DNA of 64,000 nt from Octopus sinensis (lineage: Eukaryota): assembly GCF_006345805.1 (NCBI RefSeq), contig NC_043022.1, forward strand, positions 5,952,001 to 6,016,000, in the 5' to 3' direction. Under the pieces are notes generated by a model. The model was not told the DNA's origin and did not search any database. It saw nothing but the letters and a program-made list of their open reading frames with translations. This document shows, piece by piece, positions 195-60,594 of the stretch. Position 1 is the first letter of the stretch; every line of letters begins with the position of its first letter. Both the position numbers and the translations under genes were made by a program.

Positions 195-384
195 ACACAC
201 ACACACACACACACACACTTATATATATATATATAATATATATATATATATATTATATATATATAATATATCTATATATATTTATATATATATATATTTA
301 TATTATTATATATTATATATATATAGATATTATATTATATATATATATTTATATATTATATATATTTATATATATATTATTTTT

Positions 385-416
<32 letters not shown>

Positions 417-597
417 TATTATATATATATATTTTATATTATATATATTTCTATATATATATATTATTTATATATATATATATTTATATCTATATATATA
501 TATTTAATATATATATATATTTTATTATATATACTATATTTATATATATTATATATATATATATATTATATATTATATTATATATTATATATATATT

Positions 598-632
<35 letters not shown>

Positions 633-686
633 ATATATATATTATATACTATATATTATAGTATTTATATATCTATATATATATTT

Positions 687-718
<32 letters not shown>

Positions 719-769
719 GATATATATATAGATTTATATATATATATATATAATATTTTATATCTATAG

Positions 770-821
<52 letters not shown>

Positions 822-870
822 ATATTTATATATATATAATATATATATATTTATATATATATACATCCAT
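195..870. repeat. (CA)n followed by long degenerate (TA)n microsatellite
   Basis: Directly visible; explains the I/Y-rich ORF 11..661. Confidence 0.97.
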
Positions 871-6685: not shown

Positions 6686-6709
6686 AAATTTTTCATCCAG
6701 ATAAATATA

Positions 6710-6745
<36 letters not shown>

Positions 6746-7345
6746 TGTATGTATGTATGTATGTATGTATGTATGTATGTATGCATGTGTGTATGTGTGT
6801 GTGTATGTATGTATGCCTGTATGTGTGTATGTATGTATGTATGTGTATGTGTGTATGTATGTGTGTTGTATGTGATGTATGCATGTATGTATGTGTGTAT
6901 GTATGTTATGTATGTACGTATGTATGTACGAACGTATGTATGTGTATGTATGTATGTATGTGTGTGTGTGTATGTATGTGCATGTATGTTGTATGTATGT
7001 ATGTATGTATGTATGTATGTGTTTATGTATGCATGTATGTATGTATGTATGCATGTATGTATGTATCATGTATGTATGTAGTATTACGTATGTATGTATG
7101 TATGCATGCATGTATGTATGTATGTGTGTATGTATGCATGTATGTATGTACGTATGTATGTATGTATGTACGTATGTATGTATGTATGTATGTATGTACG
7201 TATGTATGTATGTATGCATGCATGTATGTATGTATGTGTGTATGTATGTATGTATGCATGTCTGTTTAGGCATGTATGTATGTATGTATGTATGTATGTA
7301 TGTATGTGTGTATGTATGTATGTACGTATGTATGTATGTATGTCC
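6710..7345. repeat. (ATGT)n microsatellite, about 630 bp
   Basis: Directly visible; explains the MYVC/HTYI ORFs. Confidence 0.97.
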
Positions 7346-11241: not shown

Positions 11242-12230
11242 ATTTAGAATGTGCCCCTTTTTGAATATATGAAACACTGACGATATATACATGCATCAAT
11301 AGGTCATCTGTTAGATACGTAATCATCAAGGTATTATCTCACCTGTTTATACCTGTTGAAAATTTTACCTGCAAATGATGGTAGATTATAGGCTATGATG
11401 TAATCTATAAATACATCAACAATATTCTCTCGAAACAGTTGTGGTAAATTTTAAATCCAGTTTGTTTTCAAGCATGCAATTGTGTATGTGTGCATGTGTG
11501 TGTAAAAAGGTTAAGGTTGAAGACTCCCTTTGGTCATGAATGACCATGGGATTGCATCTAGAAAGTTCCCCTCTAAGGCACAAGTCCAGGCAAGGTTGTT
11601 CATGGAAGACCAGCAGTCGCCCATGCATACCAACCTCTCTTCTCCACGCCACTTATGTAATCTAGGAGGGGAATATGTTGAATGAAATCATAATTAACCA
11701 ATCTTCTTGTATTTTCTTTTACTCAAAGCCAGGAACTTTTCAGCGATCCCTCATACATGTCATATGGTCATGGCAGATGAAGAGGCATCTCACAGGGACT
11801 AAATGGGGCTCTGCCAGACTCTGGCACCCAGGAGGAGGAGGAGCTAGGATTATATCGAGACATGGTGAATGCAGGAACTTGCTGCAACAGTACATTCCCC
11901 CACATCTGACCTAACCTGACAATAATCACCATCATAGATATCAGGGTGGGGGTATGAACAACACACAGGTGTGACATGGAGAAGAATAAATAAATCAAAG
12001 CCAAGTTAAACTGTTCAATAAGTAATCTTCCCTGTGGCACATATATTGATCTTTTAGGTTGGGTACTGGTGGGTGGGTGTCTATTATTGATATAGCTGTT
12101 GGTTCACGATCGGGGTGGGGGGGGCTGCGTTAACAAAATATTTGACTGACATAAATATTCACGCAAATATTTGTTTTAATTATTTGTTTTACATTTTTTT
12201 TTGTTTTGTTTTGTTTCGTTAATCAATCAG

Positions 12231-12367
12231 CCTAACGATTACTTTTCCTTGTTTACTTTTTCAGGTGAGTCTTTTTTCTTTAATCAATTAACACTTCCTG
12301 CAACAGCTTGAGGGAGGAGGGTTTTTAGGTGGTCCTCACCTCGCACAGCACCTCGTTAAAGGTATGT
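12231..12367 (+). other. Candidate recursive splice site with 97-nt RS-exon (12265-12361)
   Basis: Branch point CTAAC 12232-12236, AG-free pyrimidine tract, CAG|GTGAGT at 12264/12265, second donor AAG|GTATGT at 12361/12362. Confidence 0.5.
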
Positions 12368-12589
12368 CAACTTAAACAAAACTAAAAAAAAAAATAACAA
12401 TAAAAAAACAAGCAAAAAAGACAATAGGATATTTTGTACTTTTCTGTTGTTTCAAAATTAATTGTATCAGTTAATATATTGATCTCTGTGTATCAGACTG
12501 CTAAGTTAATATAAAAGCGTATGATGTAAACAGCAACATGCTTTGATTTAAACACATACAGACACAGTCTCACATGCACACACATATAT

Positions 12590-12810
12590 ATTTCTTTACT
12601 ACCCACAAGGGGCTAAACACAGAGGGGACAAACAAGGACAGACAAATGGATTAAGTCGATTATATCAACCCCAGTGCATAACTGGTACTTAATTTATCGA
12701 CCCTGAAAGGATGAAAGGCAAAATCGACCTCGGTGGAATTTGAACTCAGAACGTAACGGCAGACAAAATACGGTTACGCATTTTGCACGGCCTGCTAACG
12801 TTTCTTTCAG

Positions 12811-12812
<2 letters not shown>
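12590..12812 (-). mobile_element. SINE family A
   Basis: Reverse-complement match to 4616-4847. Confidence 0.88.
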
Positions 12813-12853
<41 letters not shown>

Positions 12854-17087: not shown

Positions 17088-18169
17088 TATCCGTATAATG
17101 AAGGGTGAAATTAATTAATTTGGAATAATTATCAATTACACCAAGTAGTCTTCGGCATGTAAAAGCCTCATTCGAGGAAATTCAAGTAATACTAAGCAAT
17201 AAAGGGTTTACAACGAATTGCCTTACCACATACCGAATTTAAGAAATAGCAGTCAAAGAGTTATAGCTATTTCTTCTACTAAAAAGGGGGGGGGGGGAAG
17301 TTTCGGTAAGATGAATTATTTAATATTTAATATTTATTCTTATGCTTTCCTAAAAACTTGATTTCGAAACGTACGTCCGTAGATAACTTAAAAATGTATG
17401 ATAGATTGCCGTCAATTCATTCTCTCTTACCTGTTTGTGTCTGCCTTCCAATTGCTGTTTTTACTGAGATCCCCCCCCTTTTAGTAGAAGAAATAGCTAT
17501 ACTCTTTGACTGCTATTTCTAAATTCGGTATGTTGTAAGGCAATTCGTTGCTAAACCCTTTATTGCTTAGTATTACTTGAATTTTCCTCGAATGAGGCTT
17601 TTACATGCCGAAGACTACTTGGTGTAATTGATAATTATTCCAAATTAATTAATTTCACCCTTCATTATTACGGATAACCATATTTTATCTCAGTAGATGA
17701 CCACAGCATCTTGTTTTGGCTACACGCGGGTGGGAAGGGGCTGGTGACACAATCGTTTCATTCACACATTGAATTTGGTGATACTGGTTGCGGATTCTGG
17801 CTCGCTCTGATACTGAGTTGAGTTGGTGCCTTCTAGTATCTCAAAATTTAATATATAATCATTTATGATTATAGTATTCTACGCTGAAGAGAAAGGAAGT
17901 TTCGGTAAGATAGAATTATTTAATATTTATATTTAATTCTTATGCTTTCCTAAAAACTTGATTTCGAAACGTACGTCCGTAGATAACTTAAAAATGTATG
18001 ATAGATTGCCGTCAATTCATTCTCTCTTACCTGTTTGTGTCTGCCTTCCAATTGCTGTTTTTACTGAGATCTCCCCCTTTTTAGTAGAAGAAATAGCTAT
18101 AACTCTTGACTGCTATTTCTAAATTCGGTATGTGGTAAGGCAATTCGTTGCTAAACCCTTTATTGCTTA

Positions 18170-18172
<3 letters not shown>
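17088..18172 (+). mobile_element. Non-coding Penelope-like/retrozyme-like element: inverted arm plus about 1.5 tandem copies of a 600-bp unit
   Basis: 17088-17293 inverted vs 17471-17676; 17298-17572 direct repeat of 17897-18172; hammerhead core; (TA)n on both sides; no ORF of 60 aa or more in the track. Confidence 0.75.
17878..17983 (+). ncRNA. Type I hammerhead ribozyme (predicted, core intact)
   Basis: Stem I TCTACG/CGTAGA; CTGAAGA 17884-17890; stem II GAAA/TTTC with long extension; GAAAC 17966-17970; palindromic stem III ACGTACGT; GTC cleavage triplet 17975-17977. Confidence 0.8.
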
Positions 18173-18204
<32 letters not shown>

Positions 18205-18782: not shown

Positions 18783-19145
18783 TATGAGGTGGTATCAAAA
18801 GGTTTCCAGACTTGTTTATGTTTAATAAAAAACAACTTATTTGCCTGAGTTTTAACCTCATCTCCTTCAAAAATAGTCACCTTGCTCAGCACTACACCAG
18901 TCCCAACATTCCAGCCATTTTGGAGTCTGGCCTGGAAGTCGTTTCCCATTATCAAGTCAAGGATCTTCTACTATTTGCTCTGAATCTCGACAATGATACC
19001 AAAACGGTGACCTCTGAGTTGCATTTTCCTCTTGGGGAGGAGATGGAAGTCCACAGGTGCTAAATCTGGTGAATAGGGCAGGTGTGGGAGCGATACCAGG
19101 TTGTTTTTGGTGAGAAACTCAGAGTGAGGAGAGCTTGGTGAAGAA
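18783..19145 (-). mobile_element. Mariner transposase pseudogene, 3' fragment with terminal repeat
   Basis: Minus frame LPHLPYSPDLAPVDFHLLPKRKMQLRGHRF (YSPDLAPxD motif at 19055-19075); stops downstream; ends in TA plus TIR TGAGGTGGTATCAAAAGGTTTCCAGAC. Confidence 0.9.
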
Positions 19146-19267
19146 CCCAATTCTTCTGGAACTGCAACAGTATTCAACCCTTTTAATACCAACCCACCTG
19201 ATCCTGTCCTTGGTCTTATAATATGAACTTCGTGCTTTAAAATGATCTCAATTAAAATCCTCCAGCA

Positions 19268-19465
19268 ACATCATCATCATCATCATCATCATCGTTTAAC
19301 GTCCGTTCTCCATGCTAGCATGGGTTGGACGGTTCGACCGGGGATCTGGGAAGCCAGAAGGCTGCACCAGGCTCCAGTCTGATCTGGCAGTGTTTCTACA
19401 GCTGGATGCCCTTCTTAACACCAACCACTCCGTGAGTGTAGTGGGTGCTTTTTACGTGCCACCTG
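19268..19465 (-). mobile_element. Family B SINE/LINE 3' end
   Basis: Match to family B core and tail. Confidence 0.85.
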
Positions 19466-31930: not shown

Positions 31931-33082
31931 AGAAGCAGCATTAACTCCATCACCACTTCTGCCACAGCCACCACCACCATATTCTCAGTGTCTCCCACCC
32001 TCTCCTCCTCCTCCTCTCTCCCCCACTTCTGTACTCCCTCAGCAATCCTTTATCCCTGCATTCCCCTACCCTCCCACTACCACTGTTCTAACTCTTCCAC
32101 CCCCCCACCACCCCACACACACACATAATGGCCCTTTACACAACACCCATCTTCATCACCACCCCCAACACAAACTGACATGGATTTATAGGACAACAAG
32201 GAAGTCTTGACCTGCCAAAATTAGCAGCCAGGTCTTCTTTAATTCCACGCCCATCTTAGTGGTGTCCCCAATAAACATACATACATACACACATACATAT
32301 ATACATACAATACAGAAATATATATGTGTGTGTGTGTGTGTGTGATGGAGGCTAACCTGGGGCTAAACAACAACGGGGGGGGGGGGACACCACCCCTAAC
32401 ACCCTGATATGATTGCCATTGCCTATCACCTTCTGACACTTCCATATTGTCACTGATGCCCCAAACCCCTACTCTTCTTTTGTTGCAGCCCCTTCTTCGC
32501 AAACGACACACCGTCAGGAGATGTGAGCCTGCAGCCAAAGCCATCACTTTTAGTTACGTTGTTTAGCCCCAGGTGGATTCTGATCCTGTAGAAGATGTGT
32601 CATTAAAGATGTCCAACTCATGACCATCATGTCTTACTTCTTCACTAGTATTCCTCGGACTACATTACCATGTGTGTCTTACTTAAAAAAATACTATGTC
32701 GTTTGAGGAAGTTTGTGCTGTTATTTCTAGGAGATTTTTTTTATCATGAAGGATCTCCTTGCTGGCTTATGATTGTTAAGGGCCTAATTTATTAACAGAA
32801 ACTTGAAAAGAATGATAGCCACAACATCAATTGATATCAAGACTCAGTCCAATACATCTATTTGATTTATCATCTCTGACTTCAGACTTTAAAATGCCTT
32901 TTTTTAGGCATTTACCAATGTTTTCATCCTTATAGGTTTTCAGTGATCTAGAAACACTCTCAAGATGATGTGTATGTGTGTGTGCATGTTTTTAATTATT
33001 ATAAACCTTCCACTGAGGAGGGAACCAGTTTCCAACAAAGATACAAGGCTCCATCTTTGGGATGTAGTTAATACAGACAAAT

Positions 33083-33465
33083 TCACATTTGGAACTTGAG
33101 AAAAGTCTTGCATATTTTTACTGTTCCGCTCACAGATTGCACTTGTAATGTATGAATCAGCCGGTCAGTTTCTCTTTCTGAAAATCCCAGTTTATCCAGA
33201 TTCTCCTTTAAGCATTTACTAATGCTCCAATTATTATTGGTATAAATATGAATTCATAGTCTGGATATAGAAGCTGGAGGTTTCGAAGCAGTTGTCCATG
33301 GACATCCTCTTTTTCTTTGATTTTCAAAGAGATATCTATATCTGCAGGGTAGCTAACCTCTATGGTGGTCCATACCTTAGCCCTTCTCTCCCAAACAACA
33401 ATATCCGGCCTGTCATGTTTACATCTGGCAGAAGTTTCGATGGAAATATTCCACCAGTATTCTTT
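33083..33465 (-). mobile_element. Restriction-like endonuclease (RLE) C-terminus of an R4/Dong/NeSL-type non-LTR retrotransposon, frameshifted
   Basis: YWWNISIETSARCKHDRPDIVVWERRAKVWTTIEVSYPADIDISLKIKEKED...IPIIIGAL, then after a frameshift KCLKENLDKLGF...VSGTVKICKTFLKFQM*; RPD-IV and IEV..P..EK motifs. Confidence 0.85.
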
Positions 33466-33664
33466 GTATGTACGTACGTATGTATGTATATATACATATG
33501 TATGTATGTATGTATGTGTGTATACATATGTATGTATTGTTGACAGCATAAGAATTTAGAAACTTCAAGAGAGCCAGAAATAATTCTCTTCTGGAATGGG
33601 GAAACTTGAAGTAGATAAAGCTACCATTGTGAAACCTGGATTTTCTATCCCATTGAGTGCATGT

Positions 33665-33753
33665 GTTCTTGTCCGATCACTGAAGTTAAGTAACGTCGAG
33701 CCTAGTGAGTACTTAGATGGGTGCCCGCTTGGGAAACCTAGGTGCTGTAAGCA
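33665..33753 (+). pseudogene. 5S rRNA-derived sequence (about nt 31-119 of 5S)
   Basis: GTTCTTGTCCGATCACTGAAGTTAAGTAACGTCGAGCCTAGTGAGTACTTAGATGGGTGCCCGCTTGGGAAACCTAGGTGCTGTAAGCA aligns by eye to metazoan 5S, including box A and box C; 5' part disrupted. Confidence 0.85.
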
Positions 33754-35006: not shown

Positions 35007-35385
35007 CATCATCATCATCATCATCATCATCATCGTTTAGCGTCCGCTTTCCATGCTAGCATGGGTGGACGGGTCAACTGGGGTCTGTGAAGCTGGAAGG
35101 CTTCGTCAGGCCCAGTCAGATCTGGCAGTGTTTCTATGGCTGGATGCCCTTCCTAACGCCAACCACTCCACGAGTGTAGTGGGTGTTTTTTACGTGCCAC
35201 CTGCACAGGTGCCAGACAGAGCTGGCAAACGGCCACGAACGGATGGTGCTTTTACGTGTCACCGGCACGGGGCCAGGCGATGCTGGCAACGGACACGAAC
35301 GGATGGTGCTTTTACGTGTCACCGGCACGGGGCCAGGCGATGCTGGCAACGGACACGAACGGATGGTGCTTTTACGTGCCACCGA
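35007..35385 (-). mobile_element. Family B element with internal 60-bp tandem repeats
   Basis: 60-bp period visible 35221-35385; mirrors 59395-59793. Confidence 0.88.
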
Positions 35386-35475
35386 CAAACTGAGTTGAGT
35401 CTATAGAAAATAACATTTTCTACTCCTTGTGTTCTGATCTTTCCTTATGATCCTATCCTGGAAAGAGAGGAACAC

Positions 35476-36000
35476 ATCATCACCATTATCGTTTAATGTC
35501 TGCTTTCCATGCTGGCATGGGTTGGACAGTTTGACTGAGAACTGACTGGTCGGATGGCTGCACCAGGCTCCAGTCTGATCTGGCAGTGTTTCTACAGCTG
35601 GATGCCCTTCCTAATGCCAACCCCTCCAAGAGTGTAATGGGTGGTTTTACGTGTCACCAGCACAGGAGCCAGTCAGGTGATACTGGCATTGATCAGGCTT
35701 CAATGGTGCTTTTTATGTTCCACTGGCACAGGTGCCAGTCAGGTAGCATTGGTATCAGTCACACTCAAATGGTGCTTTTTATGTTCCACTGGCACAGGTG
35801 CCAGTCAGGTAGCATTGGTATCAGTCACACTCAAATGGTGCTTTTTATGTGCCACTGGCACAAGAGCCAGTCAGGCATCAGCCACACTCGAATGGTGCTT
35901 TTTACGTGCCACTAGCATGGGTGTCAGTCAGGCGGCACTGGCATTGGCCCAGGTATATAAAAGGATATTTTACACAGCACTGGCACAGGAGGCTTTTTAA
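35476..36000 (-). mobile_element. Older family B element with internal tandem repeats of about 66 bp
   Basis: ATGGTGCTTTTTATGTTCCACTGGCACAGG repeated at 35703, 35769 and 35835. Confidence 0.8.
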
Positions 36001-44189: not shown

Positions 44190-44680
44190 GGTGGAGGTAG
44201 TGGTGATGGTGGTAGTGGTTGTGGTGGTGGTGGTGGTGGTTGTATGATGGTGGTGGTGTGATGGTAGTGGTGGTGGTGGTTGTATGATGGTGGTGGTGTG
44301 ATGGTAGTGGTGGTGGTGGTGGTTGTATGATGGTGGTGGTGTGATGGTAGTGGTGGTGGCGGTTGTATGATGGTGGTGGTGTGATGGTAGTTGTGGTGGT
44401 TGTATGATGGTGGTGGTGGTGGTGGTTGTATGATGGTGGTGGTGTGATGGTAGTGGTGGTGGTGGTTGTATGATGGTGATGGTGTGGTGGTGGTGGTGGT
44501 TGTATGATGGTGGTGGTGGTTGTATGATGGTAGTGGTGGTGGTATGGTTGTGGTGTTGGTGGTATGATGGTGGTTGTGGTGGTGGTGGTGGTGGTGGTGA
44601 CGCCAGCAACAATGGTGATGATGATGATAGTAGTGGTGTTTTTTATGATGATGATGATGATGATGATAACAATATGGGGG
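44190..44680. repeat. Minisatellite of about 33-39 bp (GGT)nTGTATGATGGTGGTGGTGTGATGGTA in GGT/GAT tract
   Basis: About 7 recurrences of GGTTGTATGATGGTGG. Confidence 0.9.
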
Positions 44681-49487: not shown

Positions 49488-50171
49488 AATAACCTAAATT
49501 AAAACCTCACACACCACGAATAATTGGTTCAGGGCCACGTTTTAAAGTGCAAAACCACTGCAACCTAACAATGCAGATTTGTGGAAGAAATAACATGAGA
49601 GACATGCAGACAGTTTTTGTTTCATTTCCAGATTTACATCTTTTTTTCTTCCATTTTTCTTTCTTTTGTTTTCCTGTTAAAAGAGAGTTTGATAGGTCTA
49701 CAAACTTTGACATTTAAATTGTGTTTTCTGGGCCGATTTTTTTTTTTTTTTTTTTTTTGCCAGTTCTCTTTGTCATCTGGTATGGGAACATAATTTTAAA
49801 GCTTGTCTTTCCAACGTGTCTGTTCGCTTACCCTGACATCATCTTACATTTGAGAACTCTTTTCTGAGAATGAGCTGCAATAATTAAATATTACAATTAG
49901 AAGGGTGAGTGGGGGCTTTTATCATTAATTCTACTCTACATCCTTCTCTTTCAAATGGGGAACCTAACTCAGACAAAATAGTCTCTGAAGTGGGGCTTTT
50001 TTTATGTTTTCATTGCCCTTCCTGTCACTAACCCTTACCTGTTTTTCAAGCAAGGGATTTCTTATTCCGCTCAAGTTTCAAGACATGAAGTGAATGGATG
50101 ATGCAAACTGTCTCATGTTTAAGGTTCTTGTCTTTCAAGAAAAACCTTCCATTGACGAACATTTTGTTAAC

Positions 50172-57450: not shown

Positions 57451-57919
57451 TATATGCATTATGTATGTAATAATTAAACAATATATTATACTCTATATTG
57501 TTTTGTTATACATGTGATCTCCTAGCTGTGGAAAAACTTGTCTGGCATGAAACCAGTTCTTGGTGCAACAAACGTTGGGAACTGCTGCCATAAACCATTC
57601 TTGATGTGAACGGAATTACAATAGAAAGAGAGGTTTGCTATGTTACATCAAATTGTGTAGAATTCTTTGCCCCAACCCATAACGCATTATCTATTCCCGG
57701 CTTTCTGCGTATGATCTGTTGACTAAGAATTTCATCACCCAGACAAAAGCCTTTTAAATATGCTGTTTATATCATCAGAACAATCCTGTGTAATATATAT
57801 TGATCTGTATTGATTGATAGGTTGTAGGTTGCAGCATTGTGACAACAGGACTGATGGCTTTTGTTGAGGCATTTCTTATTCTCTTTTAACATGTTAGCCT
57901 GCGTGTACACACGCACGTA

Positions 57920-57922
57920 TAT

Positions 57923-57956
<34 letters not shown>

Positions 57957-57999
57957 ATATATATATACATACACAGAGACTGAGTGAAAGAGAGAGAGC

Positions 58000-58052
<53 letters not shown>

Positions 58053-58151
58053 ATATACATACACTTCTGTCTACATGTATGCATATAGGTGTGTGTGTGT
58101 GTATATATAAATATACATGTATATATAAATGTATATATACATATATATATG

Positions 58152-58182
<31 letters not shown>

Positions 58183-58334
58183 GTATATTTATATATATAT
58201 ATATATATATATACATATATATATACATGTATATTTATATATATATATATATACATGTATATATACATGTATATTATATATATATATATATATACATGTA
58301 TATATATATGTATATATACATATATATATGTATA

Positions 58335-58368
<34 letters not shown>

Positions 58369-58420
58369 CACACGTATATATATGTGTGTGTATATATAAG
58401 TACACACACACACACATACA
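57920..58420. repeat. Long (TA)n/TACA compound microsatellite
   Basis: Directly visible. Confidence 0.95.
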
Positions 58421-59394: not shown

Positions 59395-59793
59395 TGCCAG
59401 CTCTGTCTGGCCCCCGTGCCGGTGGCACGTAAAAGCACCATCCGTTCGTGTCCGTTGCCAGCCTCGCCTGGCCCCCGTGCCGGTGACACGTAAAAACACC
59501 ATCCGTTTCGTGTCCGTTGCCAGCCTCGCCTGGTCCCCGTGCCGTTGACACGTAAAAGCACCGTCCGTTCGTGGCCGTTTGCCAGCTCTGTCTGGCACCT
59601 GTGCGGGTGGCACGTAAAAAGCACCCACTACACTCACGGAGTGGTTGGCGTTAGGAAGGGCATCCAGCCGTAGAAACACTGCCAGATCTGACTGGGCCTG
59701 ATGAAGCCTTCCAGCTTCACAGACCCCAGTTGAACTATCCAACCCATGCTAGCATGGAAAACGGACGCTAAATGATGATGATGATGATGATGA
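59395..59793 (+). mobile_element. Family B element with internal 60-bp tandem repeats
   Basis: Reverse complement of 35007-35385 with one more repeat unit. Confidence 0.88.
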
Positions 59794-60594
59794 TTTCTGT
59801 TGAAAGCTGGTGTTCAGAACATAAAATAAATATGAAATTTTGATGAAAGGTTTTCTAGTTTAGGTTGCTTTAACGATCCTTTTGTTACCACACGGATTTT
59901 GTTTCAATTAATTTCAAATGTAATAAAGGATTTATTAAAAATAATTTTCTTATTTCTCAGCTGATGTTTGGAACATAAGTTAGCATGAAATTTTGATAGT
60001 AGCCCTTAAAATTTTGATCCCTCTAAAACAGATAGTTTCACATGTTTTGAGAAGAAGGTTATAATAAGGGAAACATAACAAATATCCCATATTCAATGGA
60101 TGTGTGTTCGTTAAGCACTTGTAGCTGAAATATTCCATCTATGGTAGGCCCCTTCAGAGTCATTTAGTGTTAGAAAACAATATACTTCAAAGTTGGTGAA
60201 ATGAAGCTGCTTTTGAAGTGAACAAGAATGGTATACATCGAGATTTCATAGAATTTTCTGATTATCAGTGTTGTATACTTGCCTCACTTCCGAAATGAAT
60301 TTGAATTGCCAACCAGAAGTTTGCAGATGCTGTAAAAATCTATCTGCTGATGTGCAAAAGTGTTGCACAAGTAGAACAAAATTCAAACTTTGTATTGGAA
60401 GCAGCTCCATAATGTAAATATTACCAATAAAAAAATACTTGTAGATGTGGTGTTTTGTTTAGGGAGGCCCCCTGTGTCTTTTTAACACTATGCATCTTTA
60501 AAAGGGTCTTCTTTAGAAAAAAAAAACTACTGTTGCAAGTGTTTAACTAACACACAGCATTAAGTATGTGATATTGGTTGAGTGGTTTGTATAA

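What the first reader, a model, noticed from the sequence alone, without database searches (positions are those of the whole stretch)
12231..12367. Textbook recursive splice site (AG|GT ratchet point) with RS-exon
Seen: branch point CTAAC (A at 12235, 29 nt upstream), an AG-free pyrimidine tract, CAG at 12262-12264 directly followed by the consensus donor GTGAGT, and a second strong donor AAG|GTATGT 97 nt downstream, all in unique DNA. Known: this architecture defines Drosophila ratchet points and vertebrate RS-exons in very long, often neuronal introns. Inference: a + strand host gene with a giant intron removed stepwise. I am not aware of this being documented in cephalopods. An ordinary 97-nt UTR exon that happens to start with GTGAGT is the alternative.
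Basis: partly seen in the sequence, partly recalled or inferred. Interest (0 to 1): 0.7.

Follow-up and report, generated by a model that had tools for sequence, protein, structure and literature searches.

The report
Candidate recursive splice site, unproven
A short stretch of non-coding DNA matches closely the signal that lets cells cut out a very long intron in steps, and it is the strongest such match in the window, but no host gene, RNA evidence or cross-species comparison could be obtained, so it remains a well-founded prediction rather than a finding.

Summary
CTAAC lies at 12232-12236 (branch A at 12235). An AG-free pyrimidine tract follows, then CAG at 12262-12264 fused to GTGAGT at 12265-12270. 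A second donor, AAG|GTATGT, sits 97 nt downstream at 12362.

With simple splice-site weight matrices the junction is the best donor of 7917 GT sites. It is the 6th best acceptor of 7103 AG sites, and by far the best combined AG|GT of 326 (17.8 bits against 11.9 for the next). The core plus tract is expected 0.005-0.04 times per 64-kb window by chance. The full architecture (branch point and downstream donor added) is expected about 2e-5 to 2e-4 times.

The sequence features of fly ratchet points are all present: TT at -5/-6, a recursive donor stronger than the exon donor, and a short out-of-frame cryptic exon with stops in every frame.

The claims that matter could not be tested. No coding exon or host gene was found in the window, the transcribed strand is unknown, and no RNA data or other cephalopod sequence could be reached. 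Even the cephalopod origin is unverified.

Best reading: a + strand ratchet point with a cryptic RS-exon (about 0.45). Rivals are a chance decoy, an ordinary non-coding or poison exon, and the donor of a T-rich upstream exon. If real, it is a new member of a known kind.

The parts
12232..12236 (+). Branch-point consensus CTAAC (branch A at 12235, 29 nt upstream of the AG)
   Evidence: Read directly. Only 3 of 57 strong pseudo-acceptors in the window have a CTRAY motif with an AG-free zone, and only this one has CTAAC.
12237..12261 (+). AG-free pyrimidine tract (14 of 16 pyrimidines at -20..-5; TT at -5/-6)
   Evidence: TT at -5/-6 is found in 99.5% of fly ratchet points (bioRxiv 10.1101/006163).
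12262..12264 (+). Acceptor CAG (3' splice site; splice after 12264)
   Evidence: 6th best acceptor of 7103 AG sites on both strands, 10.2 bits.
12265..12270 (+). Recursive 5' splice site GTGAGT, regenerated once an upstream exon is joined at 12265
   Evidence: Best donor of 7917 GT sites on both strands, 9.0 bits, and best composite AG|GT of 326.
12265..12361 (+). Putative cryptic RS-exon: 97 nt, not a multiple of 3, with stops in all three frames (TGA 12266-68, TAA 12289-91, TGA 12309-11)
   Evidence: No other copy in the window. No significant RNA structure (z = +0.16).
12359..12367 (+). RS-exon donor AAG|GTATGT (GT at 12362), weaker than the recursive donor
   Evidence: 4.8 bits, rank 64 of 7917. 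It is the only other + strand donor scoring above 0 between 12200 and 12700.

Best explanation
The segment is a recursive splice site (ratchet point) with a cryptic RS-exon, on the + strand, inside a very long intron whose exons lie outside this window.

Inferred mechanism:
1. The 97-nt segment is first recognised by exon definition. U2AF and U2 bind the CTAAC branch site, the pyrimidine tract and CAG. U1 binds the downstream AAG|GTATGT.
2. The upstream exon is ligated to position 12265, which removes the first part of the intron as a lariat branched at A12235.
3. Ligation recreates a near-consensus 5' splice site (xxx|GTGAGT). This site out-competes the weaker GTATGT donor.
4. In the second step the 97 nt and the rest of the intron are removed together, leaving no trace in the mRNA.
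5. If the recursive donor is not used, the 97-nt exon is included. Within a coding region that would shift the frame and introduce stop codons, acting as a poison exon.

Shown here: the motifs, their strength relative to everything else in the window, and the absence of coding capacity. Inferred only: transcription on the + strand, use of the sites, and the order of events.
For: - Exact architecture at the stated coordinates.
- The junction is the best donor, the 6th best acceptor and by far the best combined AG|GT of the window. No simulation of 150 reaches it, and 0.0055 are expected per window.
- It is the only exon-like unit in 128 kb with a strong acceptor, a CTRAY branch site with an AG-free zone, and a nearby donor.
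- Multiplying the core estimate (0.0055-0.04) by the branch-site frequency among strong pseudo-acceptors (about 0.04-0.05) and the chance of a donor within 30-200 nt (about 0.08) gives about 2e-5 to 2e-4 per window for the whole architecture.
- TT at -5/-6 matches 99.5% of fly ratchet points.
- The recursive donor is stronger than the RS-exon donor, and the cryptic exon is out of frame, as described for fly cryptic RS-exons (PMC8605326).
- The whole 64 kb lacks any detectable coding exon. Recursive sites occur in most fly introns longer than 40 kb (PMC6110457).
- The site lies in non-repeat DNA flanked by later repeat insertions.
Against: - No host gene, no strand information and no RNA evidence. 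TA skew is +1.8% and GC skew about 0 in unique DNA, which is uninformative.
- No cross-species conservation test was possible, and conservation is the hallmark that separates real ratchet points from other AG|GT sites.
- A cruder consensus test gives 0.28 expected matches per window, with 23% of shuffles holding at least one. The rule-based estimate is up to 0.04 per window, which means hundreds to over a thousand such cores by chance in a multi-gigabase genome.
- At 97 nt the segment is longer than the roughly 50 nt typical of fly cryptic RS-exons.
- Equally strong-looking pseudo-exons occur by chance at the same locus on the minus strand: acceptor 12702 and donor 12339, 17.6 bits combined.
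- Only one such site exists in 64 kb.
- Fully suppressed intronic ratchet points are rare in vertebrates (nine definitive), so the prior outside insects is uncertain.
Confidence: 0.45

Rival explanations
1. Chance decoy. The motifs are a fortuitous pseudo-exon in DNA that is not transcribed on the + strand (intergenic or antisense), or is transcribed but ignored by the spliceosome.
For: The bare core YAG|GTRAGT is no more frequent than chance (1 observed, 2.44 expected). A loose consensus is expected 0.28 times per window. T-rich tracts are common here: 1.6% of real 16-mers have at least 14 pyrimidines, against far fewer in Markov simulations. A minus-strand pseudo-exon of similar total score overlaps the same locus. 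No gene was found in the window.
Against: The combined junction score is an extreme outlier: 17.8 bits against 11.9 for the next, no simulation of 150 reaching it, and 0.0055 expected. The extra branch site, AG-free zone and downstream donor together are unique in 128 kb. The full architecture is expected only about 2e-5 to 2e-4 times per window.
Confidence: 0.3
2. Ordinary non-coding cassette exon. A 97-nt 5'UTR, lncRNA or poison exon uses the acceptor at 12265 and the donor at 12362 and stays in at least some mature transcripts. The leading GTGAGT is a coincidence or is kept silent, for example by the exon junction complex.
For: The unit is a complete exon definition unit. Stops in all frames and the absence of coding exons nearby fit a non-coding exon. 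In mammals hundreds of annotated exons begin with a 5'ss-like sequence and are kept in mRNA by EJC repression (PMC6224609 abstract). A few fly RS-exons are included despite a stronger ratchet-point donor.
Against: An exon starting by chance with a donor this strong is rare, roughly 0.046 x 0.0056 per acceptor. Once ligated, a consensus GTGAGT would compete with the weaker GTATGT, and in fly in vivo mutants the stronger donor wins. This rival therefore shades into the main explanation: it would still be an RS-exon by definition.
Confidence: 0.17
3. Only the donor is real. CAG|GTGAGT is the 5' splice site of a short T-rich first or UTR exon ending at 12264, and the upstream tract merely looks like an acceptor.
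For: It is the best donor in the window. A TATA-like cATAAATAtt lies at about 12152-12161, roughly 105-110 nt upstream (read by eye).
Against: This needs a coincidental top-0.1% acceptor-like upstream half, a coincidental CTAAC with an AG-free zone and a coincidental downstream donor. There is no CpG or GC enrichment (CpG o/e 0.35 in 11762-12583). The promoter reading is by eye only.
Confidence: 0.05

Closest known systems
Drosophila intronic ratchet points with cryptic RS-exons (Hatton 1998; Burnette 2005; Duff 2015; Joseph 2018/2021; Pai 2018)
   Same: The acceptor and donor are juxtaposed around AG|GT with a prominent pyrimidine tract and TT at -5/-6. The regenerated donor is near consensus. 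A short downstream cryptic exon has its own weaker donor, is out of frame and non-coding. The setting is at least 64 kb without coding exons.
   Different: The cryptic exon is 97 nt rather than about 50 nt. The donor is GTGAGT rather than the fly-preferred GTAAGT. There is no evidence of use, of conservation or of a host gene. The window is presumed to come from a different phylum (mollusc, unverified).
Vertebrate RS-exons (Sibley 2015; Blazquez 2018, PMC6224609)
   Same: It has an RS-exon defined by a downstream 5' splice site, a recursive 5'ss recreated after ligation, and an exon carrying premature stops so that inclusion would be a quality-control or poison outcome.
   Different: In vertebrates most RS-exons are annotated, included exons kept in by the EJC, and only about nine fully cryptic intronic sites are definitive. 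Neither inclusion nor repression can be assessed here.
Intronic pseudo-exons / decoy splice sites
   Same: A non-coding unit of acceptor plus donor lies in repeat-rich non-coding DNA, and similar units occur elsewhere in the window on both strands.
   Different: Ordinary pseudo-exons do not begin with a consensus donor. None of the others in the window combines a CTRAY branch site, an AG-free zone and a top-ranked acceptor.

Membership tests
Drosophila-type intronic ratchet point (zero-nucleotide recursive splicing) | [quoted passage not shown] | tested here: met
   tttttCAG|GTGAGT. It is the best composite of 326 AG|GT sites, the best donor and the 6th best acceptor.
Drosophila-type intronic ratchet point (zero-nucleotide recursive splicing) | Prominent pyrimidine tract with TT at -5/-6 (99.5% of fly ratchet points) | tested here: met
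   -6 and -5 are TT, and 14 of 16 bases at -20..-5 are pyrimidines. Criterion from bioRxiv 10.1101/006163.
Drosophila-type intronic ratchet point (zero-nucleotide recursive splicing) | Short cryptic RS-exon with its own downstream donor, generally weaker than the ratchet-point donor, out of frame and non-coding | tested here: met
   The exon is 97 nt (97 mod 3 = 1) with stops in all frames. Its donor scores 4.8 bits against 9.0 for the ratchet-point donor. It is longer than the typical 50 nt or so.
Drosophila-type intronic ratchet point (zero-nucleotide recursive splicing) | Located in a long (>10-40 kb) intron of a gene transcribed on the same strand | tested here: inconclusive
   No coding exon, Pfam domain or protein homologue was found in the 64 kb. 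Skews are uninformative. This is compatible with a giant intron or with intergenic DNA.
Drosophila-type intronic ratchet point (zero-nucleotide recursive splicing) | Splicing intermediates: junction reads into the site, saw-tooth nascent RNA profile, recursive lariats | not testable with these tools
   No RNA-seq data are reachable, and an exact-protein look-up of the neighbouring ORF found nothing.
Drosophila-type intronic ratchet point (zero-nucleotide recursive splicing) | Strong evolutionary conservation of the SA|SD core against poorly conserved flanks | not testable with these tools
   No cephalopod genome is available. ORF-based retrieval and a 27-mer metagenome scan found nothing.
Vertebrate RS-exon | Exon-definition unit whose first bases recreate a 5' splice site after ligation to the preceding exon | tested here: met
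   GTGAGT supplies all six intronic positions of the donor consensus, and a downstream donor lies at 12362. The exonic -3..-1 positions depend on the unknown upstream exon.
Vertebrate RS-exon | Inclusion or skipping decided by 5'ss competition or EJC; inclusion introduces a premature stop | not testable with these tools
   Only the sequence prerequisites are seen: stops in all frames and a length that shifts the frame.

The most novel reading that the evidence does not exclude
Cephalopods (and so Lophotrochozoa) use fly-type zero-nucleotide ratchet points with cryptic RS-exons to process giant introns. This would make recursive splicing a shared bilaterian solution to intron gigantism rather than an insect speciality with a vertebrate variant. 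This site would be its first described example, and its motif could seed a genome-wide search.
Probability: 0.4. Interest if true: 0.55.

Novelty: new member of a known kind. Interest (0 to 1): 0.35.

Why it matters
Recursive splicing is documented in insects and vertebrates. The literature search found no paper describing it in cephalopods or other molluscs. Cephalopod genomes are, from general knowledge, large and repeat-expanded with very long introns in neural genes, so they are a natural place for it.

A validated site would extend the mechanism to a third major animal lineage. It would also give a motif template for genome-wide prediction. By itself, one unvalidated motif instance changes little: the spliceosome is conserved, so specialists would expect such sites to exist.

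Tried and rejected
1. Host gene search.
- Listed ORFs of at least 90 aa, then stop-to-stop ORFs of at least 45 aa.
- Ran Pfam on 124 non-repeat ORFs of at least 50 aa: no family.
- Ran a homologue search on 7 ORFs flanking or spanning the site: none.
- Ran a homologue search on a 4669-aa concatenate of 70 unique, high-complexity ORFs of at least 35 aa: none.
- Enumerated splice-site-bounded open frames: nothing convincing.

2. Retrieving the same or related loci.
- Exact look-up of the neighbouring 90-aa ORF: not on record.
- A 27-mer scan of metagenome contigs: 0 hits.

3. Taxon check through transposon remnants. Only RVT_1 proteins from anonymous ENA metagenome assemblies matched, at 43-52% identity. 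The fetched locus that was available (L001) shares no DNA similarity with the window; L002 was not available to the script. The cephalopod origin therefore stays unverified.

4. Strand inference from TA and GC skews in unique DNA: +1.8% and about 0, rejected as uninformative.

5. An intronic snoRNA, miRNA or tRNA as a strand marker: Rfam gave only a 5S-like hit and ARAGORN found nothing.

6. RNA structure. CTCACCT at 12335-12341 is the exact complement of AGGTGAG at 12263-12269 and could mask the recursive donor. It is not in the minimum-energy fold, and the region folds no better than shuffles (z = +0.16), so this was rejected.

A script replaced it.

Full report
**Observation**

Reading the sequence confirms every element at the stated coordinates.
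- CTAAC is at 12232-12236, with the branch A at 12235.
- No AG occurs between the branch site and the acceptor.
- The tract cgattacttttccttgtttacttttt follows, with TT at -5/-6 and C at -3.
- CAG at 12262-12264 is directly followed by GTGAGT at 12265-12270.
- A second donor, AAG|GTATGT, has its GT at 12362, so the enclosed segment is 97 nt.
- All three + frames of the segment hold stops (TGA 12266-68, TAA 12289-91, TGA 12309-11), and 97 is not a multiple of three.

A self-BLAST of the window shows that 11762-12583 has no second copy apart from short T-run and A-run matches. It lies between a dispersed repeat (11486-11761) and a SINE copy (12584-12815). 'Unique DNA' therefore holds as far as the window can show.

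**Is it more than chance?**

The bare core is not.
- AGGTRAGT occurs three times on the two strands.
- YAG|GTRAGT occurs once, where first-order Markov simulations expect 2.44.
- A loose IUPAC consensus with one mismatch allowed is expected 0.28 times per window.

The combination is exceptional. I used simple log-odds matrices for the donor (-3..+6) and the acceptor (-20..-3, +1).
- The junction is the best of 7917 GT donors on both strands.
- It is the sixth best of 7103 AG acceptors.
- It is by far the best of 326 AG|GT composites, at 17.8 bits against 11.9 for the runner-up.
- None of 150 Markov simulations reached it; the highest was 15.4.
- Pairing upstream and downstream halves drawn independently from the real sequence predicts 0.0055 such sites per window.
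- A rule-based estimate (exact YAG|GTRAGT with at least 14 of 16 pyrimidines) gives 0.0075 from simulations. It rises to about 0.04 using the real frequency of pyrimidine-rich 16-mers.

The remaining features add to this.
- Only 3 of 57 strong pseudo-acceptors in the window have a CTRAY branch motif with an AG-free zone.
- Donors of at least 4.8 bits occur at 5e-4 per base.
- The unit 12265-12361 is the only one in 128 kb that combines acceptor >=9 bits, such a branch site, and a donor >=4.5 bits within 30-200 nt.

Multiplying these, the full architecture is expected about 2e-5 to 2e-4 times per window. Some criteria were fixed after seeing the site, so these are order-of-magnitude figures. 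In a multi-gigabase genome the core alone would still arise by chance hundreds of times or more.

**Surroundings and the host gene**

The window is AT-rich (GC mostly 0.34-0.43), packed with microsatellites and dispersed repeats, and CpG-depleted. About 45% of it has another copy within the window.

I found no protein-coding exon.
- The long ORFs are microsatellite translations or repeat fragments.
- Pfam found nothing in 124 non-repeat ORFs of at least 50 aa.
- Homologue searches found nothing with ORFs flanking the site.
- They also found nothing with a 4669-aa concatenate of 70 unique, high-complexity ORFs.
- A query made of transposon remnants hit only reverse-transcriptase proteins from anonymous metagenome assemblies, at 43-52% identity. 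This did not identify the organism.
- Rfam found only a 5S rRNA-like element, and ARAGORN found no tRNA.
- Strand skews in unique DNA are too small to indicate the transcribed strand.

The window is therefore either wholly inside a very long intron or intergenic, and the tools cannot tell which. No RNA data and no other cephalopod sequence could be reached. The three decisive properties remain untested: + strand transcription, splicing intermediates, and conservation.

**Mechanism proposed**

If the region is transcribed on the + strand within an intron, the sequence predicts the two-step path described for flies and vertebrates.
1. The 97-nt unit is recognised by exon definition.
2. The upstream exon is ligated to 12265.
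3. The regenerated xxx|GTGAGT donor (9.0 bits) out-competes the GTATGT donor (4.8 bits).
4. The cryptic exon leaves together with the downstream intron.

In fly in vivo mutants the stronger donor wins, and weakening the ratchet-point donor switches the outcome to cryptic-exon inclusion. [quoted passage not shown] Recursive sites occur in most fly introns longer than 40 kb (PMC6110457). All the sequence-level features are met here. The differences are the 97-nt length (typical is about 50) and G rather than A at donor position +3.

**Rivals**

- Chance decoy. This is supported by the ordinary frequency of the core, the abundance of T-rich tracts, and a minus-strand pseudo-exon of similar total score at the same locus (acceptor 12702 in the SINE, donor 12339).
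- Ordinary non-coding or poison cassette exon that happens to start with GTGAGT. Mechanistically this merges with the main reading, because any exon that starts this way regenerates a strong donor on ligation. In mammals such annotated RS-exons are kept in mRNA by the exon junction complex (PMC6224609).
- Real donor of a T-rich upstream exon. This needs three coincidences and rests on a TATA-like motif seen only by eye.

A possible 7-bp pairing between the recursive donor and CTCACCT at 12335-12341 was examined and dropped. The region folds no better than shuffles.

**Comparison, novelty and verdict**

The closest known system is the Drosophila intronic ratchet point with a cryptic RS-exon. 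The vertebrate RS-exon is the same mechanism with a different usual outcome. Membership is met for every sequence-defined feature and untested for every functional or evolutionary one.

Searches of the paper library found no report of recursive splicing in cephalopods or molluscs, only incidental co-mentions. If real, the site would be a new member of a known kind in a new lineage. That is useful but not surprising, given a conserved spliceosome.

I put about 0.45 on a functional ratchet point, 0.17 on an ordinary included exon, 0.30 on a chance decoy and 0.05 on the donor-only reading. Interest is 0.35.

Noticed in passing
window 33639-33753 (+): A full-length 5S rRNA-like sequence (Rfam RF00001, 52.8 bits, E 3.5e-8). 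It lies in non-coding DNA next to a retrotransposon tail. It may be a 5S pseudogene or a 5S-derived SINE head.
   Followed up: no
window about 32800-33550 (-): Remnant of a retrotransposon ORF C-terminus (...HDRPDIVVWERRAKVWTTIEVSYPADIDI...). It is 43-52% identical to RVT_1-containing proteins from ENA metagenome assemblies.
   Followed up: partly
window 18974-19270 (-): A mariner/Tc1-like transposase C-terminal remnant (...LPHLPYSPDLAPVDFHLLPKRKMQLRGHRF...), recognised by eye. It got no significant database hit as part of the composite query.
   Followed up: partly
window 17088-18173: A young composite repeat. An inverted repeat pairs 17100-17292 with 17663-17471 (97%), and a direct repeat pairs 17296-17573 with 17895-18173 (97%). 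It resembles a foldback or MITE-like element or a local duplication. It carries identical strong minus-strand donor motifs at 17430 and 18030.
   Followed up: partly
window 35014-35387 (+) and 59417-59794 (-); also 35660-35875: A dispersed repeat family carrying internal 60-66-nt minisatellites (3.2-3.7 copies, 86-92% match). Two copies are in inverted orientation at 94% identity, about 24 kb apart. Further copies lie near 43.7, 27.8, 19.3 and 5.3 kb.
   Followed up: partly
window 12335-12341 (+) / donor at 12339 (-): CTCACCT inside the 97-nt segment is the exact reverse complement of the AGGTGAG core at 12263-12269. On the minus strand it reads as a strong donor, GAG|GTGAGG (7.6 bits, 7th best in the window). 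It is not part of the predicted fold.
   Followed up: yes
window 49764-49905 (+): A second + strand exon-like unit in unique DNA: acceptor 9.9 bits, donor 6.5 bits, 141 nt, no open frame, no CTRAY branch site. It is probably a pseudo-exon.
   Followed up: no
window 220-863, 6708-7343, 44190-44599, 57918-58398: Very long microsatellite arrays: (TA)n of about 640 bp, (TATG)n of about 640 bp, (GGT)n with a 40-nt higher-order period of about 410 bp, and (TA)n of about 480 bp. They account for most of the long spurious ORFs.
   Followed up: no
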